From the IMG/VR virus record IMGVR_UViG_3300027896_005002, positions 352,030 to 416,029 of that record: a stretch of 64,000 bases of DNA; one strand, written 5' to 3'. The notes beneath the pieces were generated by a model. The model ran no database searches, had not been told where the DNA came from, and worked only from the letters and a program-made list of their open reading frames with translations. The position numbers were made by a program, and so were the translations under genes. This document shows, in pieces, positions 17,764 through 44,162 of this stretch (position 1 is the stretch's first letter; the number at the start of each line of letters is the position of its first letter).

Positions 17764-18227
17764 TAGGTCACAATCCCTTCTGTCTTTAAATACCTATGTT
17801 TATTGTCAAACAATGAATTAATTGTTTCGATATTAGTTCTAAAATCTGACTTAGTAATCCGTAACAAATGAATTCTTTCTTGCAATTGTTCTATTTTATC
17901 AAGAATTTTTCTATTTCGATGTTCAATATTATCTCTTACTTTAATATTTGAATAAAAAGGTTCTTTTATTCTCTGTACTAAAATAGCAGAATCAATGTCA
18001 TCAACTTGTGTAGGTACTACTCTAAAAAAAGATTTTTCAAAAGTTTTAAACTTAACATTCATACGATTGGAATAATCTGATAAATCAGATAATGTTTTCT
18101 GTAACTGGCCTATCTCAAAAATCATATGATTAATTTGTGCATCTACACTATCAAGTTGACTTTGCAGATACGTACGTAAAGATTCAAGTTCTTGTTTTGA
18201 AAATATTCCCAAAAAATCAAATGCCAT
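17763..18227 (-). CDS. Hypothetical coiled-coil protein (baseplate region)
   Basis: 154-aa helical ORF whose stop overlaps the start of the gp25-like gene (TAATG). Confidence 0.6.
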   Translation of the reverse strand: MAFDFLGIFSKQELESLRTYLQSQLDSVDAQINHMIFEIGQLQKTLSDLSDYSNRMNVKFKTFEKSFFRVVPTQVDDIDSAILVQRIKEPFYSNIKVRDNIEHRNRKILDKIEQLQERIHLLRITKSDFRTNIETINSLFDNKHRYLKTEGIVT

Positions 18228-18295
18228 GAATGTCTCTTTTCATAATTGTAAGATATTATGATTTTATAAAACGATTATCGATATTGAGAGGATAT

Positions 18296-18332
18296 AAAGA
18301 CATTCTCCCTTAATAGGTCGATGAATGTCTTT
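18296..18332 (-). promoter_or_regulatory. Kink-turn hairpin, copy 1
   Basis: Minus-strand RNA: AAAGACAUUC-AUC-GA-CCU-AUUA-AGG-GA-GAAUGUCUUU, i.e. 10-bp C-stem, 3-nt bulge, tandem G.A/A.G pairs and 3-bp NC-stem. Confidence 0.7.
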
Positions 18333-18363: not shown

Positions 18364-19122
18364 TTAATCGTACATCTCACCTTCTCGATGTTGTGCTAAA
18401 GATTTAAGATCACTAATAAAATAACTGTCAACTTTTGAAATTTCAGGACCCCAGTCACCAGATCTTAGTACTGCTTTTTTATGTTCTTTTGTTGGAATAA
18501 CCATAAGAGTCATACCGTCAGGATCTACACCACCATGTGGTCCCTCACCAACAGAAAATAATTGTTTGGGATATTTCTTCTTCAACTTAATAATTCTATT
18601 TACCATTCTTTTAGGACTAGTATGTGACATATCAAAATCAAAAGTTTTTAAACCTTTTACTAATTTTTGATCAGCATCTTCTAATTCTTTATTTTCTTTT
18701 GTTAAAATACTAACAACAGTATTTTTACTATATTTCTTATATGAAAGTATAATTTCATTTCCATCTTTATTCCATGTTCTGACGCCAATATGGTAATCAG
18801 TTTTAGGTAATTTCTTACTTTTTCCATAATGTTCATTAAATTGTTTAAATAATTCTTTATATTTTCTTTTAGATTTATCTGGAAACGATTCACGTATTGC
18901 ATAATCTCCATCACCTTCAGGCTCATTTTGCAATAATGATTTAATAGATTCAGAATGTTCTTGCGTGTCTTCTCCAGAAACTTCACGTTTTGGTCTCGCA
19001 GTTAACCGTCTTTTACTTTTCCTATGTCTTTTTAAATAAGCCCTTTGTTCATCTAAAGACAAATCATCCCATTTTCTTGCTTCTTTAACAAATTCTGATT
19101 GAATTATAGCCAAATGTTTCAT
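18364..19122 (-). CDS. Hypothetical basic/charged protein
   Basis: 252-aa ORF with a strong AAGGAG SD; contains KWDDLSLDEQRAYLKRHRKSKRR; no recognisable family. Confidence 0.65.
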   Translation of the reverse strand: MKHLAIIQSEFVKEARKWDDLSLDEQRAYLKRHRKSKRRLTARPKREVSGEDTQEHSESIKSLLQNEPEGDGDYAIRESFPDKSKRKYKELFKQFNEHYGKSKKLPKTDYHIGVRTWNKDGNEIILSYKKYSKNTVVSILTKENKELEDADQKLVKGLKTFDFDMSHTSPKRMVNRIIKLKKKYPKQLFSVGEGPHGGVDPDGMTLMVIPTKEHKKAVLRSGDWGPEISKVDSYFISDLKSLAQHREGEMYD

Positions 19123-19169: not shown

Positions 19170-22100
19170 TTAAAAAAACAAATTCAAAAAGCCTTGAATC
19201 TTATCTACATTCGGTCCACCAATCAATAATACCAATCCAGCAGTATAACCATTTTGACCTGAATCAGGACCTCCAATTGCAGATTTAACCTGAGCTTTTA
19301 TTCTTTCAACACCACCAGTTTTAACATCAATTCTAAGAATATAAAAACCTGCATTCGGAGAAAAAATAGTCTTTATAGTATCAATAATTTTTTCAATTTG
19401 ATCTATAAAATCTGCCAATGTATTAATCTTAACAGTCAACAAATCTATAAATTGTGTTACAGATTCAGATCCTTTTTGAATTGCATCAAGTTCTGAATTA
19501 ACCCAAGCTTCTAATGATTTAATAAAATCCTCAACGGGTTTAAATAAACTTTGTGCAGTCATATTCATCCAATTTGGGTATGTACCAGTAACACCTTCTT
19601 CTATTGATGTATAACCGGCACAAGAACCTGATGAATTACCTATCGTTGGCAAACAATAATTTGGATCATTTCTATATTGCTTATTATAATATTGTACTTC
19701 ACCACCTATTGTTCCATCCTGACATAAAACAGTATCAAAAAATAATCTATTTGGCACACATTTAGTACCTAACTTTGTATAACCGACATTTAAGCATGCG
19801 TTTCCACTATCATAAACACATCGTTTATTTACATATTGTTCACAAATTTGTTTATTGACACCATTAGCACACAAAATTTCATCAAAATTTATATTTTGTT
19901 TTCTACAAGCTGGTGAATAAGCCTTTATAGTATATTCTACGTATATATCATCACCATTTTGATAACCAATACTTGAAATATCACTAATTGTTAATATAGT
20001 TTTATTATTCTGTCTAGCTATTAACAAATCCCAACCATAAGTTAACTTTGTATCATTTAGTACTGTTATAAATCGATCATATCCAGGAGCATTTGTATCA
20101 ATTTTGCTCGTTTCCACATCAATGAATCTATCATAGTTAAAATTTAGATCATTACTTTTCATTCTACGTATAGTTTCACTCAAATTTCTAATTGAGATAT
20201 ATCTCATGTCAATCATATCATCAATTGTAAAAGTAAATGTATTTACTTGTTGAAATCCTGCATTAATTTGTATTTTTGTACTAACAGAAAAATTACTAGA
20301 TTGCTTCGCAATACCACTTCTATTAATAGATTTTACAATTACATTACTAAGTTTTTTGATCACAGTTGTTTGTGACTTATCAATATTACAAGCAAAATTT
20401 GCACATCTTTCAAAAATAACAGAATCTATCGATGGTTTTGCAAATAATTTTGATGAACCTACAACTTCATTTGATAATACACTACCACTACTCGATCCCA
20501 TTGTAGTTCTAATAGTATAATAATAATTTGTACCATTTTCAACACTTAAATCTTGATACTCATATCCTAACGGCATTGCAGGTTGAACATCTTTGCTCCA
20601 ACCAACAGCAAAATTGCTAAATCTAAGTTTATATTCAGATGCTTTCACACTACCTATCGGTTTTAACTTTTGTTTTGTTTGAGAATCAATAACATCACCT
20701 CTATTAGATATTATTGTCTTATTATCTGTATCATAATAATCTTGTTGAGCAATTATAGCATTTGATTGTAGTTGAGTCCTGTAAATATCAAATCCAGAAA
20801 CTAAATCAATTAAATTTTGTTTATGAAATATTCCAGATATACTAAATGTTATAAATTCCGGCAATTCCCATCGTACTATAACTTTTGAACTTCCAGAAAC
20901 AGCTGTAACATTTTTTGGTTCTTGAACCTGTGGTTGCCAATCTATTGACGTAAATATTTTCTGTAATGATTTTATTCCATTTATCACGTCAACAAGGTTT
21001 CCAGAATCAATAGCAATAATATATGCACCTACATCCGCTGATTCAGAAAATTGTGGTCGTTTACTATCAAAAATATCATCAAAAGAATCAGTAACTCTTT
21101 TCTTAAAAGCTTCAGATCCACCTCCAACACTTGCCAAAAATTTTGCAAATCCAGGTTCAGCTTCTACAGTCGGATCATTATAATTTATATTTGGAAATAC
21201 AGGCAATAAATAAACACCAGATGCAGCTAAATCATTAACATATTGTTCAATAGCTTTTGATAATGCAGTCAATATTGCTTTTAATGCACTTCCAGTATCA
21301 ACCAATAATACTTTAACAACACTTAACACACTATTAATTAATTTTAATATTGTCTTCATTGGATCTATTACATTTTTAATAGCATCTGCTGTTGATATAA
21401 TAGACTTCGGTAACATTGACTGTAAATCAAATGATTCCCATGCACCTTCAGGAACAACTCCAAGACCTTTTAACACAACATCTACTTGAGGTCGATCTAT
21501 ATCACTACTATTTATTCGAATTTTTCCTAAAAGATCACCTGATGTACTTGGTGCAAATATTATTGAATAAAACGCTGAACCGCCAGGAGCTATAGTTGTC
21601 GGTATAAATCCTGCAACACTATACGAAGATGAAGCACTATCTATAACACTAATATTAGTAACACTCAATGTATCATTACCAATATTATTAATCGTCACAG
21701 TTCTTTGACTTGAAGTTTTAACATTAGTATCTGCAAATAATATTTTATCTTCAACTTCAATAATTGGTTTATGAACACCAGTACCAGTGATAGTAATAAT
21801 AATTTGACTATTTATAGGATCATCACATGTAATTCTTAATTTAGCTGTATATGACACTGTATCTAATGGTTTGAATATTACATCAAAATTATAGAAATTA
21901 TTTGCTAAAACAATAGCTGATATTGGAGAAATTACAAAAACATCTGATATTAATTGTATTGAAACAATCAAATCAACACTATTAATGTTTTGTATTGACA
22001 ATATATGCTTACTTTCAATATTAGTAGGTTGATTTCCAAAATTTATATCTGATGTATCAACTAAAATTTGAGGATATATACCTTGACCAGTGACATGAAT

Positions 22101-22979
22101 TGATAAATCATTTAGTGAATTACTTTGTACAACAATATCTTGATCCACCAATGCATCATCAGTAGGTTGAAAAAATATGCCTAAAGTATAAATATTTCCA
22201 GGATTAATACTAAAAGGATAACTCTCATTTACAGAAAATGGCAAACTAAAATTTATGTTTGAAACTGTAATTACAACATTTCCTGTGTTCTTAAGTTCAA
22301 CTTTTTGCTCAATTTTTTGACCAACTTTTGTTTCAAATTTTGATGGTATACTATTTAAAAATAATGATATTATTGGTTCAATTCCTGCGCCAGAACAAAC
22401 TATTGGATCAATCAATATATTTGCAGTAAAAGTTAATTGAGCAGCTATAAGTTGCTCAACTGTAGTAGGAGTAAAAGTTACAGCAACAACGATAGATTCA
22501 CCGCTAACAACTTCAAAACTTGTTTGACTAATAGTTATATCAGGATTTAGCAATGCTTGAATGTTTGTTATATTTAAAATCGAACCATTTGTAGCAATAT
22601 TAGACACAGTCATTGATAAAGTTAACAATTCACCAATAACAACATCTCCAAAATTAAGAATTCCTGGATCAATAGATACAATGGGTTCTAATATTACAGC
22701 TATTGCATCGATAATAACATCGGGACCAGCATTATTTGAAATAGTTATTGTAGCAGATTGATCAGTATTTGCAGTATATACAAATGTAATTTGCACCCAG
22801 TCATAAGCAGCAATAGTAAAAGGTACAGCATTAGTATTAAAATCTACACTTGAAATATTTATATTAGTGATATCAACGGGATTATTACTAGTATTATATA
22901 GCGACAATATTTTTGATGCCGAATATCCTTTAGATACTGGGTCAAAATCAATTACAGTTAATGATGGTGTTACACTCAT
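19170..22979 (-). CDS. Baseplate-region protein with tandem ASH/choice-of-anchor-D Ig domains, FN3, a Cys-rich segment and a duplicated helical domain
   Basis: Four to five P.I.V....L.FG.V.......I.N.G...L.V repeats; FN3-like PKNVTAVSGSSKVIVRW; about 11 Cys in the C-terminal third. Confidence 0.6.
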   Translation of the reverse strand: MSVTPSLTVIDFDPVSKGYSASKILSLYNTSNNPVDITNINISSVDFNTNAVPFTIAAYDWVQITFVYTANTDQSATITISNNAGPDVIIDAIAVILEPIVSIDPGILNFGDVVIGELLTLSMTVSNIATNGSILNITNIQALLNPDITISQTSFEVVSGESIVVAVTFTPTTVEQLIAAQLTFTANILIDPIVCSGAGIEPIISLFLNSIPSKFETKVGQKIEQKVELKNTGNVVITVSNINFSLPFSVNESYPFSINPGNIYTLGIFFQPTDDALVDQDIVVQSNSLNDLSIHVTGQGIYPQILVDTSDINFGNQPTNIESKHILSIQNINSVDLIVSIQLISDVFVISPISAIVLANNFYNFDVIFKPLDTVSYTAKLRITCDDPINSQIIITITGTGVHKPIIEVEDKILFADTNVKTSSQRTVTINNIGNDTLSVTNISVIDSASSSYSVAGFIPTTIAPGGSAFYSIIFAPSTSGDLLGKIRINSSDIDRPQVDVVLKGLGVVPEGAWESFDLQSMLPKSIISTADAIKNVIDPMKTILKLINSVLSVVKVLLVDTGSALKAILTALSKAIEQYVNDLAASGVYLLPVFPNINYNDPTVEAEPGFAKFLASVGGGSEAFKKRVTDSFDDIFDSKRPQFSESADVGAYIIAIDSGNLVDVINGIKSLQKIFTSIDWQPQVQEPKNVTAVSGSSKVIVRWELPEFITFSISGIFHKQNLIDLVSGFDIYRTQLQSNAIIAQQDYYDTDNKTIISNRGDVIDSQTKQKLKPIGSVKASEYKLRFSNFAVGWSKDVQPAMPLGYEYQDLSVENGTNYYYTIRTTMGSSSGSVLSNEVVGSSKLFAKPSIDSVIFERCANFACNIDKSQTTVIKKLSNVIVKSINRSGIAKQSSNFSVSTKIQINAGFQQVNTFTFTIDDMIDMRYISIRNLSETIRRMKSNDLNFNYDRFIDVETSKIDTNAPGYDRFITVLNDTKLTYGWDLLIARQNNKTILTISDISSIGYQNGDDIYVEYTIKAYSPACRKQNINFDEILCANGVNKQICEQYVNKRCVYDSGNACLNVGYTKLGTKCVPNRLFFDTVLCQDGTIGGEVQYYNKQYRNDPNYCLPTIGNSSGSCAGYTSIEEGVTGTYPNWMNMTAQSLFKPVEDFIKSLEAWVNSELDAIQKGSESVTQFIDLLTVKINTLADFIDQIEKIIDTIKTIFSPNAGFYILRIDVKTGGVERIKAQVKSAIGGPDSGQNGYTAGLVLLIGGPNVDKIQGFLNLFF

Positions 22980-34105: not shown

Positions 34106-34656
34106 TATACATTCCTAACATCGAAAGTTTCAGTAATCATGAATTGAAAATCAAATTCAAAATTAAATGGTTTTTGATCAGTTTCATTTATTGTCATAGA
34201 TTCAAATGATCCTCTATAAATAACATCATCGTATGCAATAATTACTCTACCGACTGATTTTATTAATCCACCACCACCTGTAAGTAGTGGACTTGAATTT
34301 GTTACTCGTCTATTATAATTTCTACCATTATTACGATAAATTTCAATAAGACTTTTTAAATTTCTGTAACCTAATGTATCCTTTCTACCATCTGTAGTCA
34401 ATCCATTTGTACCATAAAACATTGCGGATTTTCCTGAACAATTCATAACATCAAGTTCATCATAATCAAAGTTAAAAACATATGATGCACTATTTCTAGT
34501 TGCTGGTCTGTTTCTAGCTTGTGTTACTTTTTTTACAAATGTTTTATTAAATTCTTCAGGATTTATTGCAAGTACTAATGTAGGCGGCGGTTCATCAATG
34601 TCCAATTCAAAAAACATCGGTTTTGAAGCTAGTTTGCATCCTAAAATATTAACCAT
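34105..34656 (-). CDS. Tail tube initiator-like protein (paralogue 2)
   Basis: Tube-like fold signature INP...G.....YRG.F.S..I.E...KPF...F.F; located after the tape measure gene. Confidence 0.65.
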   Translation of the reverse strand: MVNILGCKLASKPMFFELDIDEPPPTLVLAINPEEFNKTFVKKVTQARNRPATRNSASYVFNFDYDELDVMNCSGKSAMFYGTNGLTTDGRKDTLGYRNLKSLIEIYRNNGRNYNRRVTNSSPLLTGGGGLIKSVGRVIIAYDDVIYRGSFESMTINETDQKPFNFEFDFQFMITETFDVRNV

Positions 34657-35377
34657 TTGTTTGTCCTGTTGGTATGTTGACTATATCAAGAGTTGATCTA
34701 TCATTTCTAATAGCACCTGGTGTTGGAACAGTTGTAACATTAGTAAATGATAAAACTCTACCGGGATAAACTTCTTTTGTTACTTTGAATGTAAAATCAT
34801 ATTCAAGTTGATATGGTTTTTCTGCAATTTCATTAAGATTAAAACTATCAAAATATCCTCTATACACGGCATCGTCATAATTCATTACTACATAGCCTTG
34901 AGCAAGTATACGATTAGTTTTAGAATCATACAATGTTCCATTATTTCTATAAATCTGTACAAATTGTTCAAACGATTTAAAATTATCTGTGTCTCTACGA
35001 CCATCACTTGTTAATCCTAATTGACCGTAAAAACTTGCAGATTGTCCAGATGCTGATAATGAATCTAATTGTTCACCCCAATGTTCTTCAACAAAACCAG
35101 CCCAAGTTCTTTTATGATTAATTAATTGACTGTATTGTTCAGATAAATTATGTGGATTAATTTTCATTGTCAAATCTGGTAATGTATAACTACTTGGTAA
35201 TCCACCAATTTGCCAAATAATTAATTTTTTATTTCTAACTGTACCTTGTCTTACTTGACTAGGAATAGGAATACCTGAATATTGATCAAGATTCCTATTA
35301 AGTCTGATATCAGTTTCACTAATAGTATTTATCGTGTTTTGTAATCCAAAAATTGCATCACTTGTACTTATACCCAT
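34649..35377 (-). CDS. Tail tube initiator-like protein (paralogue 1)
   Basis: Aligns to the neighbour: GLTSDGRRDT/GLTTDGRKDT, IYRNNG in both, YDDAVYRGYF/YDDVIYRGSF. Confidence 0.65.
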   Translation of the reverse strand: MGISTSDAIFGLQNTINTISETDIRLNRNLDQYSGIPIPSQVRQGTVRNKKLIIWQIGGLPSSYTLPDLTMKINPHNLSEQYSQLINHKRTWAGFVEEHWGEQLDSLSASGQSASFYGQLGLTSDGRRDTDNFKSFEQFVQIYRNNGTLYDSKTNRILAQGYVVMNYDDAVYRGYFDSFNLNEIAEKPYQLEYDFTFKVTKEVYPGRVLSFTNVTTVPTPGAIRNDRSTLDIVNIPTGQTNG

Positions 35378-38034
35378 TAAGCACCTACCGTTTTCTCATC
35401 ATACAAAACTCTATAGATTATTTGCTCAATTTCTTGTCTGTCGCGCTGATTAATATTAAGTGTAATATGATTTGTTATTGCTGGCCTTGTATCTACAGCC
35501 TTGGCAACACCACCGCCTCCTTTAAGCATAGACATTAATGTATTTAAATTATTAATGCCAGCTTTTTGTGTTGCATCTTTATCAAAAACATACTCATTTT
35601 TATGAACTGCACCTGCAATATCATTATCAGATCCTGTACCAGTATATCCACCACGTGCATAACCTGCACCTTTTACTACTGGTGTATTTGGACGAGCAGC
35701 AGCAGCCATTCCCTCTGATGCAGCTAATTCTCGACCAGTCATTGTACTTCTATTAACTTCTATTGTTTTAATATCGACAGGCTTTTGCTTCTTTTCAAGT
35801 CCAAAAAATTTTGTAAGATTTTCAATTGCTTCAGCAGCAGATGCTAATAAAGGACCCATTGTGTTTGTCAACCAATCATAAATTTGTTCTATTACTTGCC
35901 AAATTTTTTCTTGTATAGATGTTAATGCAGCTCTTGTACCCATTTCAATTATATGAGCTTGTTCTTTTTCCTTTTTTCTTAATTCCTTAGCTTGTTCTGC
36001 ACCAATTTGTGTTCCAATACCTTCAAATTTTTTACCACTTTTAGAAAATTGCTCTATTAATCGTAATACTCCAGGTGATATTCCTATTGTTGGCATCAAT
36101 TTATTAAGTTCAAATCTATGTGATTCAATTGCTTCTCCAAGTTTATCAGGAATAATTTTGCCAAATTTATCTATAGTTCCACTTAAAAGACCACCGCTTG
36201 CTTTAATCATTGCTTTAACTTGTGCTTCAATTCGCGGTCCCACATCCATTTTCTCAAATTCATTTAATAATGTAGATGCAGATTTTCCAATAGCACCATT
36301 TGTACTCAATTGCATAACTAAAACTTTTTGAGTATCAGTCATTGTGTTAACACTATTTAACATTTCAGTTGCAAGTTGTTCAGCTTGTTTTTGCGGCATC
36401 TTAAGACCCTTTGTCAAGTCTCTAAATGAAGCAGAAACTTGAGTTATATCATTGCCATATATAGCTAAACCTTGAGCAGCATTCATGACATTTGAATAAA
36501 ATCTTGATGTTGTTATGCCTGCTTCTTTAGCATCATTTTTCATTATAACAAAAGTATCAGTAATTTGTTGACCCGTTTTCTTAAATTCATTTCTAAGATC
36601 ACCAGCTTCAGATGCAACCTCTTCAAAAGATTGACCGGTTATTGTACCAATTTGTTCAATATCTGCCATAAATTCTTTAAAATTATGTCTTGCAGTTTTT
36701 TGTGTAATATCAAGTGCAAAACCAGCTTTAGTTAATGCTTCAACATTTTTTACTGCATCTTCATATGTCATTCCAACTTCATTATAAAGACCTCTTAATG
36801 ATTCTCTAAATGCATTAGCTTGACCAACTGCACCTTTATCAATTGCATCTCCCAATTTGCCAAATCCTATAGACCCTGATGCTGCTAATTTTAAAATATT
36901 CTTCTGTGCAGTTTTAATCTCTTTATTAAAATTCAACAACATCATAATAGCAGTTGCAATTCCACCCAATGCCATTAATGGTCCCGCAAGCTTTCCTGCT
37001 ACAGTCATTAATTCACCACCCACATATCCTGCAGCTCCTGCTCCTGGACCACCACCAGCAACAACACCAGCTGCAACTCCTCTACCAGCGCTTTTAACAG
37101 CTTGTCGTTTTTCTTCCTTCAATATTTTTTTACGTTCAAAAAATCCAATACCTTGTTGTTTAAGTAATAATCCATGTAACTTTATTTCATTAAGTTGATC
37201 TTTTAGATCTTCTTTCTTCATCTTTCTAGTTTTCTTGTATAAATCAAATTGCTTTTTCTCAAATTTTGATTGCTTTTCATTAAGCGGTAGCATCTGCTTT
37301 GCTCGTTTTAATCTCTCTTTTTCAGTTAATTCTGGATGAGTTTTTTGCATTTCTTCAGCTAATTTTTCTTGCATTGCTTTGCGCTGTTTTATAATATCAT
37401 TCATCTCAGTATTTAATTCATTTAATCTATCACTAGATCTTTCCTCTTCTTGTGAAACATCCAAAGCAGACTTATCCAGATCTTTTATATCACTTTTAAT
37501 TTTTAATTTACTTTTATTTAATTGTGATAATTTATCCTCTAATTCATTACTGCGTTTTTTCAATTTATTTTCATTTTCAATATCAGTTGTTAATTTCTTA
37601 TTTAAAACACCTTCTAATTTTTTAATTTTTAATGCATCTTCATCAGAATCTGTCCCATTTTCTTTAAGCTCCTGTATCTTCTGTTGAATCTTAATTAATT
37701 CATCTTCTGTTGCTTTTCTAGTTTCTATAGCTTTATTAGTATCAACTTCCAACATTTTATTTTCAATATTCAATTTTTTAATCTGATCTACAACCAACTT
37801 ATGTTTACCTTTGGTTTTAGTAATATTGTCAGCAATGGCACTCTGCTTATCTAATATAGTCGAATGTTCTTTCTGTAATTTCAATAAATCTTTTTGAGTT
37901 TTCATCCATTTTGGATCAATCTCTACAGAACGTAACCCTTCAGTTATTTGTTTACTCAATTCCTGCATTTTTTGTTTGTCAATTTTACCAAAATTGACAT
38001 CAACAGTCATTGATGCATCACTGTTCCGTGCCAT
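35377..38034 (-). CDS. Tape measure protein
   Basis: Long coiled coil, a hydrophobic Gly/Ala stretch and the C-terminal GYARGGYTG....AGAVHKNEYV motif; canonical position after chaperones. Confidence 0.85.
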   Translation of the reverse strand: MARNSDASMTVDVNFGKIDKQKMQELSKQITEGLRSVEIDPKWMKTQKDLLKLQKEHSTILDKQSAIADNITKTKGKHKLVVDQIKKLNIENKMLEVDTNKAIETRKATEDELIKIQQKIQELKENGTDSDEDALKIKKLEGVLNKKLTTDIENENKLKKRSNELEDKLSQLNKSKLKIKSDIKDLDKSALDVSQEEERSSDRLNELNTEMNDIIKQRKAMQEKLAEEMQKTHPELTEKERLKRAKQMLPLNEKQSKFEKKQFDLYKKTRKMKKEDLKDQLNEIKLHGLLLKQQGIGFFERKKILKEEKRQAVKSAGRGVAAGVVAGGGPGAGAAGYVGGELMTVAGKLAGPLMALGGIATAIMMLLNFNKEIKTAQKNILKLAASGSIGFGKLGDAIDKGAVGQANAFRESLRGLYNEVGMTYEDAVKNVEALTKAGFALDITQKTARHNFKEFMADIEQIGTITGQSFEEVASEAGDLRNEFKKTGQQITDTFVIMKNDAKEAGITTSRFYSNVMNAAQGLAIYGNDITQVSASFRDLTKGLKMPQKQAEQLATEMLNSVNTMTDTQKVLVMQLSTNGAIGKSASTLLNEFEKMDVGPRIEAQVKAMIKASGGLLSGTIDKFGKIIPDKLGEAIESHRFELNKLMPTIGISPGVLRLIEQFSKSGKKFEGIGTQIGAEQAKELRKKEKEQAHIIEMGTRAALTSIQEKIWQVIEQIYDWLTNTMGPLLASAAEAIENLTKFFGLEKKQKPVDIKTIEVNRSTMTGRELAASEGMAAAARPNTPVVKGAGYARGGYTGTGSDNDIAGAVHKNEYVFDKDATQKAGINNLNTLMSMLKGGGGVAKAVDTRPAITNHITLNINQRDRQEIEQIIYRVLYDEKTVGA

Positions 38035-38431
38035 CTACAATCTCCGTTTGTTCAGTTCCTAATTTTTTGTCAATACTACTTTTAATCTTACCATCTAAGA
38101 TACAATATTCATTAAATAGCATTTCTACTAATTCATCACCAAAAGATAAAACAATTTGCCTCTTATCGTCAACAAATGATTTCGGATCTAATTTTACATC
38201 ATTTATAGCAATAATAGATCTTGCTATTGTTTCAACTTTTAATGTATGAGTAGCAGCATCAGCATCATTATATTTTGCACAACTTTCAAAAACATCTATT
38301 GTTTCTTGTGAGGTTAATGGTGCCAGTAATATTTTTACTTTGGCTATTTCTACTTGTCTTTCACTATAACCAAAAGATTCTAATGACTTTAATGCAGTTA
38401 ATGCATCTACAACTTTTTTAATTTGATTCAT
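38018..38431 (-). CDS. Tail assembly chaperone-like protein (paralogue 3)
   Basis: Likely start is the ATG at 38431 (SD AAGGA); LAPLTSQE...KVETIARSIIAIND motif. Confidence 0.65.
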   Translation of the reverse strand: MNQIKKVVDALTALKSLESFGYSERQVEIAKVKILLAPLTSQETIDVFESCAKYNDADAATHTLKVETIARSIIAINDVKLDPKSFVDDKRQIVLSFGDELVEMLFNEYCILDGKIKSSIDKKLGTEQTEIVDGTEQ

Positions 38432-38888
38432 TTGAATTTTCCTTTTTTTGTTCTTCTTTTTTAATCTGTTCTTCTTTTTTAATTTGATCTTCTTTATATC
38501 CAACAACATTTGTTTCTGCAGTCAATTTTATTTTTTCAAAATATTCATCAATATCACCAACCAATTTTGCATATTCTCTATACACATAATCAACCAATGT
38601 TTGTTGCCACTGTCCTATAACTGATTTTTTAATATTTATATCAATAGTTTCAGTCGACATTCCATTAATTTGCGTTATTGATCTACTTAATGTTTCAATC
38701 TTATGTTTATAGACAAATGCCTGTCCCCACGTATTCATACATTCAATAAAAGTAGCAGTTTCATCTTCTGCACCTAATGACTTTATTACTACTTCAAACT
38801 CATCACCAATTGTTACAGTTGCAGTCCGTTTTTCCAGTTCAGCTACAGCATTTAATGCATCTAAAGCACTATCAAACTTTTTTACCAT
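38418..38888 (-). CDS. Tail assembly chaperone-like protein (paralogue 2)
   Basis: Likely start is the ATG at 38888 (SD GGAGG); IKSLGAEDE...KIETLSRSITQING motif. Confidence 0.65.
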   Translation of the reverse strand: MVKKFDSALDALNAVAELEKRTATVTIGDEFEVVIKSLGAEDETATFIECMNTWGQAFVYKHKIETLSRSITQINGMSTETIDINIKKSVIGQWQQTLVDYVYREYAKLVGDIDEYFEKIKLTAETNVVGYKEDQIKKEEQIKKEEQKKENSNESN

Positions 38889-40251
38889 GATTAACCTCCA
38901 TATGAATTTCATCTAAATTTTGTTGTTTAATTTGTGATATCATATTCTCTTGTTCATTCTCAAATTTATTTTTTGCAGATTTATTTGTTAAAATACTATC
39001 CCTCATATTAAGCACTCGTTCTTTACTATCAGTAATCTTAGGATTTTTAAGTGATTCTATTATTTTCATTACCTCAGTTTTTTGATCTTCTTCCTCTTTA
39101 ATATATTGTTCAATAAAATTAGTTGTAGTTTCATCACTCTCATTTGCAACTTCATTTAATATACTATCTTTATTTTTCAACATTGAAAATGATGTTATAG
39201 TTACAATGTCTGAGTAATCTACTCCATTAATGAAATACTTATTTGATTTCATTTCTTCTTTAATATTTTCTGCAACTACATCATCACCTAATGTAGATAC
39301 CTGAATAAATCCAACGTTAATTCCTTTTGGCGCCTCTGGTAAATTAATAACTATTGCGTTAGATAATTTTTTCTCATGTAATATTTTTGCTCGACGTACA
39401 TTTTCTTTTTTGATTCTAAGTTCTTTATAGAATTGATATTCTTCATGTTCTCGAACTATTCTGTCATGTTCATCTTCAACAAACGCCTTTGTTAATATTT
39501 GTTGTACTCTACTATTTCGATCAAGAATAGATTCATCAGGTCTTTTCACTAAAGCATCAAATAATTCATCTGCTGTATTTTCTATCATAATTTTTCCATT
39601 TTCATTTTTTTGAATTTCTGCGCGCTCTTCACGTTCTAACTGTTCTTCCTGTAAAATTCTTTTCTTATTTTGAATTTGTTGCATTGCTTTTGGATTAACA
39701 AATGCACAAATACTATCTGTCATATATTCAACTCTAGCCCAATCAATTTTATTCTGATTTAATAAATCTTCTTGTTGATTTAAATAAATCCAAATTTGTT
39801 GAATATATGATATTCCTTTTGACTCAAATTCAGGATTACCAGTTATTACTGCACTATTAAGGGATGATTTAGTAGCTTTTAATACTGACCAATATAATCT
39901 TGAATCATCAGTTTTAACGAAATCATTGATAAGTTTGATTGCATTATGATAACGATTCATTAATTTCAAATATTGTTCAAAAACTTTTATAATTACTTGT
40001 TTTGGCCAGTCTTTTATTTTCTCTCTACAATCATTTATCTTACAACCATTAATTGAGTAGATCGATCTTTGAACGGTATCCATCGCTGCAAGTAAATTGT
40101 AATCATTATGTAAATCTTTATATGTTTCGACAATAAAAGATTCTTCAGATGCACACAGCGTTCTAATAACAATAATAAAATCATTACCGAACGTTAATGT
40201 CTCTTTTAAATAACCATCAAAAATTAACGCTTTAATATCATTAAATTTCAT
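38872..40251 (-). CDS. Chaperone-like N-terminal domain plus long helical extension (paralogue 1)
   Basis: IRTLCASEE...MDTVQRSIYSING motif. Start is uncertain; the track's 40320 ATG lies inside the K-turn hairpin. Confidence 0.55.
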   Translation of the reverse strand: MKFNDIKALIFDGYLKETLTFGNDFIIVIRTLCASEESFIVETYKDLHNDYNLLAAMDTVQRSIYSINGCKINDCREKIKDWPKQVIIKVFEQYLKLMNRYHNAIKLINDFVKTDDSRLYWSVLKATKSSLNSAVITGNPEFESKGISYIQQIWIYLNQQEDLLNQNKIDWARVEYMTDSICAFVNPKAMQQIQNKKRILQEEQLEREERAEIQKNENGKIMIENTADELFDALVKRPDESILDRNSRVQQILTKAFVEDEHDRIVREHEEYQFYKELRIKKENVRRAKILHEKKLSNAIVINLPEAPKGINVGFIQVSTLGDDVVAENIKEEMKSNKYFINGVDYSDIVTITSFSMLKNKDSILNEVANESDETTTNFIEQYIKEEEDQKTEVMKIIESLKNPKITDSKERVLNMRDSILTNKSAKNKFENEQENMISQIKQQNLDEIHMEVNHGKKV

Positions 40252-40271
40252 AGAATTTAAACCAACAAATT

Positions 40272-40286
40272 TTGTGAATGTAATTA
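40272..40286. repeat. 15-bp inverted-repeat arm (partner at 44249-44263)
   Basis: ttgtgaatgtaatta is the exact reverse complement of taattacattcacaa at 44249-44263. Confidence 0.8.
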
Positions 40287-40304
40287 GAGAAAAGAGAGGA
40301 ATTG

Positions 40305-40340
40305 AGGGCATTCTCCTCATTTAGAGTCAATGAATGCCCT
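40305..40340 (-). promoter_or_regulatory. Kink-turn hairpin, copy 2
   Basis: Minus-strand RNA: AGGGCAUUC-AUU-GA-CUC-UAAAU-GAG-GA-GAAUGCCCU, followed by a pyrimidine tract; 20 nt after the tube stop codon. Confidence 0.7.
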
Positions 40341-40360
40341 TGGAGGTTTCAAATATAAAT

Positions 40361-40999
40361 TTATGCCAACGATATCAATTTACTGATAGTAGTAGGATCA
40401 CGATCAACAAGTGTATCACCATAAGCACCGCGACCAGCAGCAGGATCATAAACATCAGTAATGTTTACTGCACAATCCTGCATAATCGTTGATGCACCAA
40501 TTTCAAATGTAATATTATAATCTTGCATCCAGCAACCTTCATAATAAGTCTGAATAATATTACCTGTCAGTCCACCTGTTTTACTTGTTCCTCTTTGTAC
40601 TGTATAGGATCCTGTGCCAATGAAATCAGGAACAATAATTTGTTCCTTAATATCAAAAGGCCAACGATGATGTTTCAATGACCGAATAATTCCTGAAGCA
40701 CCAGCATTATAACCAAGAACCTGCATAATATTTACAAGATACATTACAGCAATACTTAAAGAACCAGTTAAATCAGTGACACCAACTGATTGTTCAGCTG
40801 TTCTATCACCATGACCGATTCCTCTTACGGGTTCTGTCGGTCTTGATTGTGCCGGCGCCCAAGATTGTAGTAAACCAATTTGGTTTGCTGTAGGATCAGC
40901 TCCACCTGGATGAGCAGTAAATACTTTTACTTTTTGACTATTAAGTAAACTAGTATTTGGAGTAGATCCTTGTTGATAAATATAACTATTAGTAGCCAT
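40361..40999 (-). CDS. Tail tube protein
   Basis: IGLLQSW...SRPTEPVRGIG, GSLSI and YYEGCWMQDYNITF motifs; downstream of the sheath; strong GGAGG SD. Confidence 0.85.
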   Translation of the reverse strand: MATNSYIYQQGSTPNTSLLNSQKVKVFTAHPGGADPTANQIGLLQSWAPAQSRPTEPVRGIGHGDRTAEQSVGVTDLTGSLSIAVMYLVNIMQVLGYNAGASGIIRSLKHHRWPFDIKEQIIVPDFIGTGSYTVQRGTSKTGGLTGNIIQTYYEGCWMQDYNITFEIGASTIMQDCAVNITDVYDPAAGRGAYGDTLVDRDPTTISKLISLA

Positions 41000-41390: not shown

Positions 41391-44162
41391 TTAGAGTTTT
41401 GCTCTAATATTAAATGTCACTCTAATATATGATAATTCAAATACTGGCTTATAGAAAGCTTCAGCTACTAAATAGTTAGGATCAGTGTCTGACGGTGTAG
41501 CTGTAACATTTGTATAATCAGAAATAATTTCAGCTTCCTTAAGAGCTGATAATGTTGCAGCGAGAGTAGAAGCAACATTACTTGCAGTATTGGGTAAGAA
41601 TTTCTTACCAATATACTGATCAAGACTAGATCTAGCCTGAATTTGAACCTCATCCATAATTGTAACAATGTTCGGTGCTTTATTAAATGGGTTACTCATA
41701 TCAGTTGTTAAAGCATGACGAACTTTCAAAATTCCACTATCAGAAACAATTACTGTTATACCAGCAGAAGCAGTTTCATCCATTTCAATCTCATCCATAT
41801 CTCGAACTAACCGTTTGAATCCAGTAATTGTCTTTCTTGTCATAGGTTCTGCAACATCATATGCTGTAGTTACATTCAATCCTACAAGAGCGGCAGCAAT
41901 GTAACTACCATCAACAATATATTCAGATTCAACTCCTCGTTCATCAGTTAATCCAATTACAGCACCATCAGGATAAACTGCAACAATACGAGAATAACCT
42001 AAAGCTTTTGCATAAACTGCAGCATCTTGAGATTCGGTTCCTACAGCAAATCCAATAAAAGCAGTTCTTTCTGATCTTCGTCTTTCAGATGACATTGTAG
42101 CTAAGTTAGTCTTAAGTGCAGATATTACTGTAGCAGAAGTAGTAACAACATGAATTACTCGAGGTTTAATTCCATTAATCGGCTTTTCTGTCTCAGCTAA
42201 AGCTTCAATAAATGCTTCATCTGATGCTACATCCTGACCAGGTTCCTTTAAAACTTGTTTACACATAACAGCAACAGCACCATTAACCATCATTAAAAAT
42301 GCTGATAATGTAATTTGATTACTAATGTCCAAAGCACCATATTCATTAGTAATATCTTTAAATAGTGTAAATACTTTAGGCGTAAAATCTGTCTTTTGAT
42401 AATAATATGTGATGTAATATGTAGAACCTACTGAAGGTTCACGTCCACTTCTATCAAAAGTCTGAATATTTGTTACATCACCAACACCAGTGTTCAAAGT
42501 ATCAGAAACAATCAACCTTAATCCATACATAACATATTCTGGTCCTTGACAACTAGTTATTACAGCTGACGTTCCGGTCTTGAATGGACCTGCAATACCA
42601 GTACCAGGACCACCAGATCTTGTGCCAGGAATGTCATCATTATGACAATGAATTGTAATTGTGTCACCTGGTGAATATGTTCCATCTGGTGTAATAGTAA
42701 ATTGTAATCCTGTACGAGCATCAATATATGTACTTCCTGTTTTACCGGCACCATTAGATCCTAAAATATTAGTAGATGTAACAGCAAAAACAGTCGAACT
42801 TGAAAATTGAATTGTTACAACTTCGTCAACTGCTTTAGTTTTACTAGCTTTTAGATGCGCACCAGAAGCGTCCATAAAAGTCGGTGTAGGTGTAGTTGAA
42901 TATCCTGTAACCTTAGCATTAAATAATGAACCATTAGCTGAAGTACTAATCTTATATGTTCCAGTTCCTGCAGCACCTGCAATAACAACTTGTATTGCAT
43001 AAGATTCATCCATTAGCTGACTTCTCCAGTATGACACTTCAACTAAAGATCCACCACCAGGAATATTCTTCAAATATACTTTTCCTGTTTCACCATCAAC
43101 TCTTGTAACTGCAACTTGTGTACCATTTACATATACAGCTGCTTTTGTTGGGTCATCAGTAATAACATTGCGACCATTACCGTCAACAATTGGTAAATAT
43201 TTGACTGTTAAAACATTTTCAACACCGGTAAATTGTGACGAAACATCTTCTTTAATAATTCGATCATCAACTAACATTGTTGCAATCTGGTCTTCAAAAT
43301 AAATGGATCCAGAAGTATGCGTCATTACAGTTTCTAACACTCCAGCACCCCATTGTATCTTATTGCCATCAAGAACAACAAAATCAACACCTTCAACATA
43401 GTTTGCTAAATCTGGAGAATCACCAACTGAAACAACACTCGTTAATCCACTTTGCGGCAATAAATCAAAAGTATCAGCATATTGATTAAAGTAGTAAGTC
43501 AATGTTACTGTATCAGTTATTAATGGTGCAACAGCAAATGTTACAACACCATCAATACCATTAACATCAGAAACTGTAACAACTAAACCATTAACTTTTG
43601 CAACAACATCAGTAATAGTTGTTGTTGGAACACCACTACCTCGACCATCAACAATTGGTTTATGTGATGTATAAAATATTCTATTAGTTCCATTAGCTTG
43701 TGTCGATTCATCTTCATTATTGATCTTTGTATCAGTCAATTTGAAATAATAAGTAATTGCAACAAAATCAGTAGCTTTTGGAGGTAATTGAAGAGTTACA
43801 AGACCATTAAGACCATCAACTCTAACAACAGGTACTGGATTATTATTAACACTTGCAATTACATCAGATACTCTATTTGTTATGGTCCCAGTACCATCAC
43901 CAGTTACTATGGGATAATAAGTAACTTGAAATACCGTATTTAAACCATCAGCTTGTCCAGAAACATCTTCATTAGAATACTTGTTGTCGATATAAGCAGA
44001 TGATCCACGAACAACATCCTGATTCAACAACAATTTCTGTTCTTGACCTGTGCCAATAACAATAGGAATTCTTAATCCGCCAAGTAAACTTGCAACGTTC
44101 GGATCTAACAAAGTCCTATCATACACACCAGGCGCCAAATAACCGGAAACAAATGCTGCCAT
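41391..44162 (-). CDS. Contractile tail sheath protein with inserted surface modules
   Basis: N-terminal YLAPGVYDRT and C-terminal IVTIMDEV...YIGKK...ISDY..V.....AFYKPVFELSYIRVTFNI are classic sheath termini. Confidence 0.95.
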   Translation of the reverse strand: MAAFVSGYLAPGVYDRTLLDPNVASLLGGLRIPIVIGTGQEQKLLLNQDVVRGSSAYIDNKYSNEDVSGQADGLNTVFQVTYYPIVTGDGTGTITNRVSDVIASVNNNPVPVVRVDGLNGLVTLQLPPKATDFVAITYYFKLTDTKINNEDESTQANGTNRIFYTSHKPIVDGRGSGVPTTTITDVVAKVNGLVVTVSDVNGIDGVVTFAVAPLITDTVTLTYYFNQYADTFDLLPQSGLTSVVSVGDSPDLANYVEGVDFVVLDGNKIQWGAGVLETVMTHTSGSIYFEDQIATMLVDDRIIKEDVSSQFTGVENVLTVKYLPIVDGNGRNVITDDPTKAAVYVNGTQVAVTRVDGETGKVYLKNIPGGGSLVEVSYWRSQLMDESYAIQVVIAGAAGTGTYKISTSANGSLFNAKVTGYSTTPTPTFMDASGAHLKASKTKAVDEVVTIQFSSSTVFAVTSTNILGSNGAGKTGSTYIDARTGLQFTITPDGTYSPGDTITIHCHNDDIPGTRSGGPGTGIAGPFKTGTSAVITSCQGPEYVMYGLRLIVSDTLNTGVGDVTNIQTFDRSGREPSVGSTYYITYYYQKTDFTPKVFTLFKDITNEYGALDISNQITLSAFLMMVNGAVAVMCKQVLKEPGQDVASDEAFIEALAETEKPINGIKPRVIHVVTTSATVISALKTNLATMSSERRRSERTAFIGFAVGTESQDAAVYAKALGYSRIVAVYPDGAVIGLTDERGVESEYIVDGSYIAAALVGLNVTTAYDVAEPMTRKTITGFKRLVRDMDEIEMDETASAGITVIVSDSGILKVRHALTTDMSNPFNKAPNIVTIMDEVQIQARSSLDQYIGKKFLPNTASNVASTLAATLSALKEAEIISDYTNVTATPSDTDPNYLVAEAFYKPVFELSYIRVTFNIRAKL

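What the first reader, a model, noticed from the sequence alone, without database searches (positions are those of the whole stretch)
40290..40346. Kink-turn copy 2 directly after the tail tube gene
It lies 20 nt after the tube stop and is followed by CCUCUCUUUUCUCU, so it could act as a protein-stabilised 3' barrier or terminator that steps expression down from sheath/tube to chaperones/TMP. An in-frame AUG of the next ORF begins in its apical loop. The flanking CCUC(C) tracts are complementary to its GAGGAG strand, which allows alternative folds (seen; function inferred).
Basis: partly seen in the sequence, partly recalled or inferred. Interest (0 to 1): 0.75.

Follow-up and report, generated by a model that had tools for sequence, protein, structure and literature searches.

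The report
Conserved kink-turn RNA hairpin after tube gene
A short RNA hairpin with a textbook kink-turn sits just after the tail tube gene of a 416-kb uncultured phage; it is conserved with compensating base changes in related huge phages, so it is a real, undescribed regulatory RNA element that probably needs a still unknown binding protein.

Summary
On the minus (coding) strand, 40340..40305 forms a hairpin with all the sequence hallmarks of a standard kink-turn: a 9-bp stem, a 3-nt bulge AUU, tandem G.A/A.G, a 3-bp stem and a 5-nt loop. It starts 20 nt after the tube stop codon.

It belongs to a family absent from Rfam. Eighteen distinct copies from two clades of huge phages keep an invariant core (UC-AUN-GAC ... 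GGAGA). They pair in 99.4% of cells, and 7 of 10 pairs show double changes. Strand-specific G.U pairs place the structure in the mRNA sense.

There are 1-3 copies per genome, all in the tail module: after the tube gene, upstream of a coiled-coil gene (window copy 1, 18332..18296), and one further site in one genome.

The invariant C-G pair next to the G.A pairs predicts, by published rules, that the turn does not fold without a protein. No L7Ae-family gene was found in six of these phage genomes.

The terminator reading is only partly supported. Close relatives have a U tract after the hairpin; this window does not. The second clade has a separate terminator upstream, and its hairpin loop forms a pseudoknot. 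The loop AUG is not the real start, which is ATG 40251.

No RNA data could be found, so the function remains inferred.

The parts
40305..40340 (-). Kink-turn hairpin, site A (the finding). Layout: C stem 40340..40332 / 40313..40305; bulge AUU 40331..40329; G.A/A.G at 40328..40327 and 40315..40314; NC stem 40326..40324 / 40318..40316; loop 40323..40319.
   Evidence: Sequence read; fold. Covariance-model scores: 64.3 bits (R1) and 41.7 bits (R2). Covariation.
40341..40360 (-). 20-nt spacer between the tube stop and the hairpin. It ends in the CCUCC tract (40346..40342), a pyrimidine motif kept as CCYC or UCUUC in all copies.
   Evidence: Complementarity of the 5' flank to the purine strand is weak (26 of 500 shuffles reach the observed value).
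40252..40304 (-). Pyrimidine- and A/U-rich spacer between the hairpin and the real start of the next gene. It contains CCUCUCUUUUCUCU (40299..40286), has no predicted structure, and has no Shine-Dalgarno motif before ATG 40251.
40361..40999 (-). Tail tube protein gene (212 aa), upstream neighbour of site A.
   Evidence: AF2 model from a 48-sequence alignment, pLDDT 61.6. Foldseek best matches are tail tube proteins: phage 812, PVC, diffocin, lambda gpV, Hcp (E down to 3e-6) and Bacillus phage G gp179/gp180. The gene lies after the sheath gene.
38872..40251 (-). Conserved 459-aa gene of unknown function, downstream neighbour of site A. The real start is ATG 40251; the 23 codons upstream, including the loop AUG at 40320, are not conserved.
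   Evidence: No Pfam or PHROG family; no informative Atlas hit.
18296..18332 (-). It has CCCUC upstream and CCUCUC downstream.
   Evidence: Scores: 63.1 bits (R1) and 39.8 bits (R2).
17763..18227 (-). 154-aa coiled-coil (prefoldin/FliJ/YwqH-like) gene, downstream neighbour of site B. It is also the downstream neighbour of the kink-turn in clade II genomes.
18364..19122 (-). 252-aa basic protein gene, upstream neighbour of site B. It is an insertion specific to this phage, lying between the giant Ig-like protein gene and the kink-turn.
41391..44162 (-). Tail sheath gene (923 aa), which sets the context of the tail module.
   Evidence: PHROG 2839, E 4e-26. tblastn matches annotated sheath genes of Tunturiibacter phage Tunturi_5 and Bacillus phage G.

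Best explanation
The element is a conserved kink-turn hairpin formed by the sense-strand late mRNA of the tail gene module. It belongs to a family, not yet described, that is restricted to one lineage of huge (190-425 kb) uncultured phages.

I propose that it is the docking site of a kink-turn-binding protein. That protein would be either a host L7Ae-family protein of the YbxF/YlxQ type or an unrecognised phage protein. Binding would fold and clamp the turn. The resulting RNP marks the boundary between a cistron needed in high copy (the tube) and the next, weakly initiated cistron, and gates how much expression passes that boundary.

In the window's clade the clamped hairpin is also the only hairpin after the tube gene, and in most relatives a U tract follows it. 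There it would act as a leaky terminator or 3' barrier. In the sister clade a separate terminator does that job, and the kink lets the apical loop pair with the 5' flank (a pseudoknot) in the leader of the next gene.

Shown: the sequence motif, its conservation, the covariation of both stems and of the pseudoknot, strand specificity, copy number and synteny.
Inferred: the kinked geometry, protein dependence, the identity of the protein, and the regulatory outcome.
For: 1. Every sequence requirement of a standard k-turn is met and invariant in 18 distinct copies: 3-nt bulge, GA...GA, -1b:-1n C-G, and NC helix.
2. Both helices covary. 99.4% of 180 cells are paired, against 34-56% when the partner is slid, and 7 of 10 pairs show double changes. 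The same holds for the 9-sequence set with flanks.
3. Ten G.U cells would be A.C on the other strand, so the structure belongs to the mRNA sense.
4. The element is genome-specific and rare. There are 2 strong model hits in 416 kb, the next at 13-16 bits, and 1-3 hits in relatives, all in the tail module on the coding strand.
5. Site A is present in all 16 loci of the two clades. Five distant huge relatives, three of them complete genomes, have none.
6. 3b.3n is C-G in all copies. McPhee et al. 2014 show that C-G is unfolded in metal ions alone, that protein-bound k-turns (U4) are biased to Watson-Crick pairs at this position, and that riboswitch k-turns almost never have it (0.1%) (PMC4382518).
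7. Conservation extends 2 bp into the C helix and 1-2 bp into the NC helix plus the bulge letters. That is the size of a protein footprint.
8. Boundary role: a U tract follows the hairpin in 5 of 7 close relatives. In clade II a terminator hairpin lies in the same spacer. The downstream genes in the window have no Shine-Dalgarno motif, although 42% of the genome's ORFs do.
9. The clade II pseudoknot is 98% paired, against 6-44% when slid, and 3 pairs show double changes between site A and site B.
10. Bacterial precedent for a k-turn/L7Ae-homologue RNP: OLE RNA with OapC/YbxF (PMC9723947).
Against: - No Ribosomal_L7Ae (PF01248) gene was found in six genomes of the lineage, two of them 97-98% complete. 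The host is unknown, so no binder is identified.
- No RNA-seq run was listed, so neither a 3' end nor a coverage step is shown.
- The hairpin is predicted stable without any protein (-17 kcal/mol), so a simple fold/unfold switch is unlikely.
- In the window no U tract follows either copy.
- Natural insertions point in opposite directions. At site A, in L006 and L008, an extra gene sits between the kink-turn and the 459-aa gene homologue, so the element stays with the tube. At site B in the window an extra gene sits between the old upstream gene and the kink-turn, so the element stays with the downstream gene.
- Seven close relatives do without site B altogether, so the element is dispensable there.
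- Shine-Dalgarno presence downstream of kink-turns overall (7 of 17) equals the genome background.
Confidence: 0.5

Rival explanations
1. It is a plain Rho-independent terminator of the tube gene. The internal loop is incidental and no protein is involved.
For: The element lies right after a gene needed in high copy. A 9-bp stem with 5-6 G-C pairs is followed by at least 5 U in 8 nt in L002, L004, L005, L006 and L007. No other hairpin lies between the tube gene and the next gene in clade I.
Against: Window copies have 3 U in 8 nt. Clade II copies have no U tract and sit downstream of a separate terminator. A terminator does not explain why the asymmetric loop UC-AUN-GAC/GGAGA is invariant while the stems change freely. 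Nor does it explain copies upstream of other genes (site B, site C).
Confidence: 0.15
2. It is a 5' leader operator or enhancer of the downstream gene. The bound or folded kink-turn controls translation or stability of the next cistron; the upstream gene is irrelevant.
For: - The distance to the next start codon is short and fairly constant: 43-68 nt in window A and B, G006 B, G007 A and C, and L277 B.
- Site B keeps the same downstream gene in both clades even though the upstream gene differs in the window.
- In clade II the element lies after the terminator, that is, in the leader.
- At site B, copies with the kink-turn mostly lack a Shine-Dalgarno motif (G007 has AAGGA), while the 7 relatives without it have a strong GGAGG.
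- In window site B, the 10-nt AGACAUUCAU of the 5' strand is repeated at the start codon, so the 3' strand could alternatively mask the initiation region.
- Precedents: the archaeal L7Ae leader (PMC6298567); the T4 gene 32 leader pseudoknot (my own knowledge).
Against: The element never overlaps the ribosome-binding site or start codon. In L006 and L008 a 1.3-1.5 kb gene separates it from the 459-aa gene homologue. The site B correlation rests on about two evolutionary events. The repeat at the start codon is seen in one genome only. Clade II site A genes have normal Shine-Dalgarno motifs.
Confidence: 0.25
3. It is a ligand-sensing or self-folding RNA (riboswitch-like pseudoknot or ribozyme). 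The kink-turn is only an architectural elbow and no protein partner exists.
For: In clade II the kink-turn lets the apical loop pair with the 5' flank. The same architecture is used by the SAM-I riboswitch (PMC4382518).
Against: Clade I, including this window, has no pseudoknot. 3b.3n = C-G is the worst folder in ions and is found in 0.1% of SAM-I k-turns. There are no conserved unpaired nucleotides beyond the k-turn core that could form a pocket. No Rfam family, including the small ribozymes, matched even at E up to 10.
Confidence: 0.05
4. It is a DNA-level signal (protein-binding palindrome, recombination or homing site) or a chance hairpin.
For: Mobile genes lie nearby: TnpB next to the element in L006, and a GIY-YIG endonuclease 2 kb from site B. 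TTGAC within the core resembles a -35 hexamer.
Against: Pairing, not sequence, is conserved in the stems, with double changes. G.U pairs are strand-specific. The asymmetric bulge is conserved. No -10 element is conserved at the right spacing. There were 0 such hairpins in 20 shuffled genomes.
Confidence: 0.03

Closest known systems
Kink-turn in the 5' leader of archaeal l7ae mRNAs (Daume et al. 2017, PMC5539422; Huang et al. 2019, PMC6298567)
   Same: Both are short mRNA hairpins containing a standard k-turn whose sequence predicts no folding without protein. Protein binding stabilises the hairpin to regulate expression of a neighbouring gene.
   Different: In archaea the hairpin occludes the Shine-Dalgarno site of the gene for the binding protein itself. 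Here the start codon is 43-123 nt away, the neighbouring genes are tail genes, the host is bacterial (class II tRNA-Tyr, TnpB and SD use), and no L7Ae gene is present in the phage. The hairpin here is also stable on its own.
OLE RNA k-turn bound by OapC/YbxF in Firmicutes (Lyon et al. 2022, PMC9723947)
   Same: [quoted passage not shown]
   Different: OLE is a ~600-nt non-coding RNA of cells. The element here is a ~36-nt intercistronic element of phage mRNAs, and binding was not tested.
U4 snRNA and box C/D k-turns (15.5K/Snu13, L7Ae)
   Same: Both have a 3-nt bulge, tandem G.A and a Watson-Crick (or otherwise non-folding) 3b.3n, which makes the fold protein-dependent (PMC4382518). L3 is a pyrimidine in 16 of 18 copies here, as in U4 (AAU) and box C (from my own knowledge).
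   Different: Those belong to eukaryotic or archaeal RNPs and lack the conserved UC/GA C-helix end. The context and function are unrelated.
SAM-I riboswitch P2 k-turn with loop pseudoknot
   Same: Clade II copies use the kink to bring the apical loop to a distal strand.
   Different: The window's clade has no pseudoknot. The 3b.3n rule points the opposite way. There is no ligand pocket and no Rfam match.
Intercistronic hairpins of phage late operons (intrinsic terminators; T7 RNase III sites)
   Same: Both sit between a highly expressed structural gene and the next cistron. A U tract follows the hairpin in several clade I relatives.
   Different: The invariant k-turn internal loop is not a feature of either class. 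The helices (9 + 3-5 bp) are short for RNase III (my own knowledge). There is no U tract in this window.

Membership tests
Standard (simple) kink-turn motif | Three-nucleotide bulge on one strand between a canonical (C) helix and a non-canonical (NC) helix | tested here: met
   The bulge is AUU (15 copies), AUC (1) or AUA (2) in the 18 copies; the length never varies.
Standard (simple) kink-turn motif | Tandem G.A and A.G pairs directly 3' of the bulge (G1b-A2b opposite G2n-A1n) | tested here: met
   GA after the bulge and GA before the 3' C strand are invariant in 18 of 18 copies. The sheared geometry itself cannot be shown from sequence.
Standard (simple) kink-turn motif | Watson-Crick C helix ending in a -1b:-1n pair (usually C-G), and an NC helix continuing beyond the G.A pairs | tested here: met
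   -1b:-1n is C-G in 18 of 18 copies. The C helix is 99.2% paired with 5 covarying pairs; the NC helix is 100% paired with 2 covarying pairs.
Standard (simple) kink-turn motif | Tightly kinked three-dimensional fold with cross-strand A-minor contacts | not testable with these tools
   This needs FRET, probing or a solved structure. The complex prediction with RNA was not folded by the tool.
L7Ae-family protein / k-turn RNP | An L7Ae/L30e-fold protein available to bind (encoded by the phage or the host) | tested here: not met
   There was no PF01248 match at E<=1 in six-frame searches of G000-G003, G006 and G007, while the controls responded. The host genome is unknown, so a host protein could not be tested.
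L7Ae-family protein / k-turn RNP | Sequence that keeps the k-turn unfolded until a protein binds (Watson-Crick 3b.3n) | tested here: met
   3b.3n is C-G in 18 of 18 copies. The rule comes from PMC4382518 and is an inference from it, not a measurement on this RNA.
Rho-independent terminator | Stable G+C-rich hairpin immediately followed by a U tract (about 5 or more U in 8 nt) | tested here: inconclusive
   The window copies have 3 U in 8 nt and the scan does not call them, though it cannot score a stem interrupted by a bulge. Of the 7 clade I relatives, 5 have 5-7 U in 8 nt. Clade II copies have 1-4 U and a separate terminator upstream.
Rho-independent terminator | Transcript 3' ends at the site | not testable with these tools
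   No RNA run was listed for this sequence.
Archaeal-type L7Ae leader operator | The k-turn hairpin overlaps the ribosome-binding site or start codon of the regulated gene | tested here: not met
   The real start, ATG 40251, is 54 nt downstream. The loop AUG at 40320 is absent in all relatives.
Any Rfam 15 family | Match to a curated covariance model | tested here: not met
   There were no hits at gathering score in the 64-kb window. In E-value mode on the element only chance-level hits appeared (E 2.4 or more).

The most novel reading that the evidence does not exclude
The kink-turn copies are the operators of a small post-transcriptional regulon in the tail module of a huge-phage lineage. 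They would be read by a kink-turn-binding protein that is not a recognisable L7Ae homologue, either a new phage-encoded RNA-binding fold or a structural protein moonlighting as a regulator. The RNP would activate or gate translation of tail genes without a Shine-Dalgarno motif, replacing SD-driven initiation. Supporting observation: at site B, relatives without the element have a strong GGAGG, while most relatives with it have none.
Probability: 0.15. Interest if true: 0.8.

Novelty: new variant of a known kind. Interest (0 to 1): 0.6.

Why it matters
Kink-turns are known from ribosomes, snRNPs/snoRNPs, riboswitches, archaeal L7Ae leaders and the bacterial OLE RNP. My literature searches found no natural kink-turn element in phage mRNAs, and Rfam has no matching family.

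This is a clean, very small (about 36 nt) motif with strong covariation. It has two structural variants, a plain hairpin and a pseudoknot, and its sequence signature points to protein dependence. Yet it occurs in phages that carry no L7Ae gene and infect bacteria.

That combination makes a concrete question testable: which bacterial or phage protein reads kink-turns in mRNAs, and is this how huge phages set the ratio of tube to downstream tail proteins? The element could also serve as a compact natural part for L7Ae-type synthetic switches. If it proves to be only a decorated terminator, the finding is of modest interest.

Tried and rejected
- **Rfam.** Nothing at gathering score; nothing meaningful in E-value mode on the element or on a clade II copy.
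- **L7Ae search.** No PF01248 match in the phage's own contig or in five related genomes.
- **RNA evidence.** Two searches for sequencing runs listed only one DNA run, a freshwater metagenome that is probably the source sample, and no RNA run.
- **Complex prediction.** B. subtilis YbxF (RXL7_BACSU) with the hairpin RNA was not folded by the tool and is no evidence either way.
- **Tube structure.** The first AF2 model, from an 8-sequence alignment, was useless (pLDDT 34). PDB sequence searches with tube profiles found nothing. Only the 48-sequence model gave a usable fold.
- **Host identification.** The genome-contig scan gave only one distant tube homologue, in a Lysinibacter MAG.
- **Downstream proteins.** Atlas look-ups were uninformative for the 459-aa protein and gave only a coiled-coil hairpin for the 154-aa protein.
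- **Pseudoknot in the window's clade.** The loops (GAAA, ACAU, AGUCUU and others) have no conserved partner upstream, so I rejected it.
- **Kink-turn GGAG as Shine-Dalgarno for the adjacent AUG (GGAGAAUG).** Rejected: the spacing is 1 nt, and the AUG is absent in relatives.
- **Promoter reading of TTGAC.** Rejected: no conserved -10 element.
- **Triple-helix or antiparallel pairing of the 5' CCYC flank with the purine strand.** Considered; support is weak (26 of 500 shuffles) and I left it open.
- **Tunturiibacter phage Tunturi_5 (nearest cultured sheath relative).** No copy in the 11.6 kb around its sheath gene.

Full report
**Setting**

The window is the last 64 kb of a 416,029-bp linear IMG/VR virus contig (31% G+C, CheckV completeness 77%). 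Nearly all genes are on the minus strand.

Gene order around the finding, in the direction of transcription:
- Tail sheath, 44162..41391 (PHROG 2839, E 4e-26).
- A 122-aa ORF.
- A 212-aa ORF, 40999..40361.
- The element.
- A conserved protein of unknown function, 40251..38872.
- Two overlapping ORFs of about 164 aa.
- Tape measure, 38034..35377 (PHROG tape-measure families).

The 212-aa protein has the tail-tube fold. An AF2 model from a 48-sequence alignment (pLDDT 61.6) matches the tube proteins of phage 812, PVC, diffocin and lambda gpV, and Hcp (E down to 3e-6). It also matches gp179/gp180 of Bacillus phage G, which follow that phage's sheath gene.

The host is bacterial but unidentified. 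The 88-nt tRNA-Tyr is of the long-arm bacterial type, 42% of ORFs carry a 4-mer Shine-Dalgarno motif against 4% background, and a relative carries a TnpB gene.

**The observation**

The minus-strand RNA reads: stop UAA (40363..40361), 20 nt ending in CCUCCA, then AGGGCAUUC-AUU-GA-CUC-UAAAU-GAG-GA-GAAUGCCCU (40340..40305), then CAAUU-CCUCUCUUUUCUCU.

This is the consensus layout of a standard kink-turn placed in a hairpin:
- a 9-bp C helix;
- a 3-nt bulge;
- G.A and A.G positions;
- a 3-bp NC helix closed by a 5-nt loop.

RNAfold returns exactly this hairpin as both MFE and centroid (-17.4 kcal/mol). The energy alone is not unusual (z = -1.4).

**More than chance**

A generic kink-turn-hairpin scan of both strands of the 416-kb genome gives many weak, A+U-rich candidates. 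Only two have long Watson-Crick stems: this one and 18332..18296. With strict criteria (Watson-Crick C helix of at least 7 bp, NC helix of at least 3 bp, loop of 3-9 nt) the genome has 2 sites, and each of 20 shuffled genomes has 0.

The two copies share CAUUCAUYGAC...GGAGAAUG and the flanks CCYC(C)A and CCUCUC. They differ by compensatory changes in both helices.

**Conservation and covariation**

Relatives of the tube protein in IMG/VR define two clades that carry the element at the same place:
- Clade I: tube identity at least 80% to the window; 8 loci, one identical to the window.
- Clade II: tube identity 46-48%; 8 loci, from contigs that include 192, 211 and 424 kb records of 97, 91 and 98% completeness.

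Tube homologues at 50% identity or less lack the element. These comprise more than 60 further loci, and the five distant huge genomes searched whole include three complete ones of 437-470 kb with terminal repeats.

An alignment of 18 distinct hairpins has the invariant columns UC-AU-GAC and GGAGA. Counted on the k-turn structure:
- 99.4% of 180 cells are standard pairs, against 34-56% when the 3' partner is slid by 1-3 columns.
- 7 of 10 pairs show changes on both sides (50 cells).
- The three pairs that never vary are the two closing the C helix and the one next to the G.A pairs.
- Ten cells are G.U or U.G. These would be mismatches on the opposite strand, so the structure is that of the sense RNA, not of DNA or an antisense transcript.

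The smaller clade I set with flanks gives the same picture.

**Copy number and sites**

Two covariance models (R1 with flanks, R2 hairpin only) were used.
- The window's genome has exactly two strong hits: 64 and 63 bits with R1, and 42 and 40 bits with R2. The next hit scores 13-16 bits.
- G006 and G008 have two copies, G007 three, and G002 one.
- All copies are on the coding strand, in intergenic spacers of the tail module.

Site A (tube gene, then element, then a gene of about 460-480 aa) is present in all 16 loci.

Site B lies upstream of a 150-190-aa coiled-coil gene (prefoldin/FliJ-like), 22-26 kb downstream of site A. It is present in the window, G006, G007 and G008, the last with bulge AUA. 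It is absent in seven clade I relatives, which instead have a 29-63-nt spacer with a strong GGAGG.

Site C occurs only in G007, upstream of a 176-aa gene without a Shine-Dalgarno motif. That gene is homologous to window ORF 35377..34649.

**Two structural variants**

In clade II the tube stop is followed by a G+C-rich terminator-like hairpin that itself covaries. Next comes AACUGCA, then a 7-10-nt CU-rich linker, then the kink-turn hairpin. Its apical loop, UGCAGUU, is complementary to AACUGCA. Sites B and C have GACUACA/UGUAGUC instead.

On 8 sequences this pseudoknot is 98% paired, against 6-44% when slid, with three pairs changed on both sides. A kink is the obvious way to bring the loop back to the 5' flank.

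Clade I, including the window, has short variable loops with no conserved partner. There is no separate terminator. In 5 of 7 relatives a run of 5-7 U in 8 nt follows the stem directly. The window copies have only 3 U in 8 nt.

**The next gene's start**

The ORF listed from AUG 40320 is misleading. Homologues start 63-132 nt after the element with M(D/E/N)..F.DIK.L.F.G, which aligns with M24 of the window ORF. No relative has an AUG in the loop. The real start is ATG 40251, 54 nt after the hairpin, with no Shine-Dalgarno motif.

**Protein dependence**

The pair following the G.A pairs (3b.3n) is C-G in all 18 copies. McPhee et al. showed three relevant things (PMC4382518):
- Watson-Crick pairs at this position, 'G-C and C-G especially', prevent folding in metal ions alone.
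- 97% of U4 snRNA k-turns, which are bound by the 15.5K protein, are predicted to be unable to fold in Mg2+ ions alone.
- Only 0.1% of SAM-I riboswitch k-turns have C-G or G-C.

By that rule this family has been selected to kink only with a partner. The invariant letters extend over the bulge, two C-helix pairs and one NC pair, which is about the size of a protein footprint.

Precedents for k-turn/protein control exist. In archaeal mRNAs, L7Ae represses its own leader (PMC6298567; PMC5539422). In bacteria, the OLE RNA carries a k-turn bound by OapC/YbxF (PMC9723947).

However, six-frame searches with PF01248 found nothing in six genomes of the lineage. This step is inference.

**What it does**

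The element always lies at a cistron boundary in a long co-directional operon. At site A the upstream gene is the tube, needed in hundreds of copies. The downstream gene in clade I has a poor ribosome-binding site or none.

In clade I the hairpin is the only structure after the tube gene and usually carries a U tract. In clade II a dedicated terminator occupies the same spacer. So a step-down at this boundary is evidently selected. The kink-turn itself must add something else, because it is conserved where a separate terminator exists and where no U tract follows.

Natural insertions do not settle whether it belongs to the upstream or the downstream gene:
- In L006 (TnpB, Pfam OrfB_IS605) and L008, an extra gene sits between the element and the 459-aa gene homologue.
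- In the window, a 252-aa gene sits between the old upstream gene (the giant Ig-like protein, ending ...NLFF as in all relatives) and the site B element.

I therefore commit to a protein-clamped boundary element that gates expression across the junction. I give the specific 'terminator/3' barrier' reading about one chance in four, and a 'leader operator of the next gene' reading a similar weight.

**Alternative folds**

The CU tract 3' of the hairpin can pair with the purine strand (GGAGAG-type) over 5-8 bp in all copies. The summed best run is 116, against 104 +/- 4.6 for shuffled flanks; 3 of 500 shuffles reach it. The 5' flank is weaker (26 of 500).

The sequences are related, so these numbers overstate significance.

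In window site B only, the 10-nt AGACAUUCAU of the 5' strand recurs at the start codon of the downstream gene. The 3' strand could therefore mask that initiation region. Other genomes do not show this.

**Limits**

No transcript data exist for this uncultured phage. The three-dimensional kink, the binder and the regulatory outcome are all untested. The host is unknown.

Noticed in passing
window 18364..19122 (-); also G000:C1 at 93576, 182050, 58881, 217297, 210051 and others: The N-terminal 45-90 residues of the 252-aa basic protein (MKHLAIIQSEF...KRHRKSKRR) form a multi-copy module fused to many different C-termini. There are 22 matches in this genome, 17 in G002, 11 in G003 and none in clade II genomes. 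It could be a targeting or packaging signal, or a nucleic-acid-binding domain of a paralogous family. This gene is an insertion next to kink-turn site B.
   Followed up: partly
L289 (G007:C1:69200-73200) 2038..2072 (+): A third kink-turn copy (site C, bulge AUA, pseudoknot GACUAC/GUAGUC) occurs in one clade II genome. It lies 46 nt upstream of a 176-aa gene without a Shine-Dalgarno motif that is homologous to window 34649..35377.
   Followed up: yes
window 18227..18245 and 18321..18330 (-): A 10-nt direct repeat, AGACATTCAT, occurs in the 5' strand of kink-turn site B and again ending at the ATG of the downstream gene (18227). The 3' strand of the hairpin could pair with either copy. It is seen only in this genome.
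   Followed up: partly
L006 862..1812 and L008 4890..6224: Extra genes are inserted just downstream of the site A kink-turn in two close relatives: a TnpB (OrfB_IS605, E 8e-14) and a 444-aa ORF without a family.
   Followed up: partly
window 15476..16267 (-): A GIY-YIG / NUMOD3 homing endonuclease gene lies inside the tail module. It overlaps the start of the 1348-aa baseplate-wedge-like gene by 23 nt.
   Followed up: no
window 38018..38509 and 38418..38912 (-): Two ORFs of about 164 aa overlap by 92 nt just upstream of the tape measure gene. This is the usual position of the tail assembly chaperone pair made by programmed frameshift. No family matched.
   Followed up: no
L033-L039, L046, L049, about 30-110 nt after the tube stop: Distant tube homologues (34-38% identity) carry a different conserved G+C-rich structured spacer after the tube gene (GCGGAGGU...CCCGNCCCG), not a kink-turn.
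   Followed up: no
window 19170..22979 (-): The 1269-aa protein has several HYDIN/ASH/Cep192-type Ig-like domains and DUF1573. Its C-terminus (...GYTAG...NLFF) is conserved as the gene upstream of site B in all relatives.
   Followed up: partly
G000:C1:60858-90435 and 312712-316228 (outside the window): ARAGORN finds 28 tRNA genes in two clusters. They include a long-arm (88-nt) tRNA-Tyr, which points to a bacterial host.
   Followed up: no
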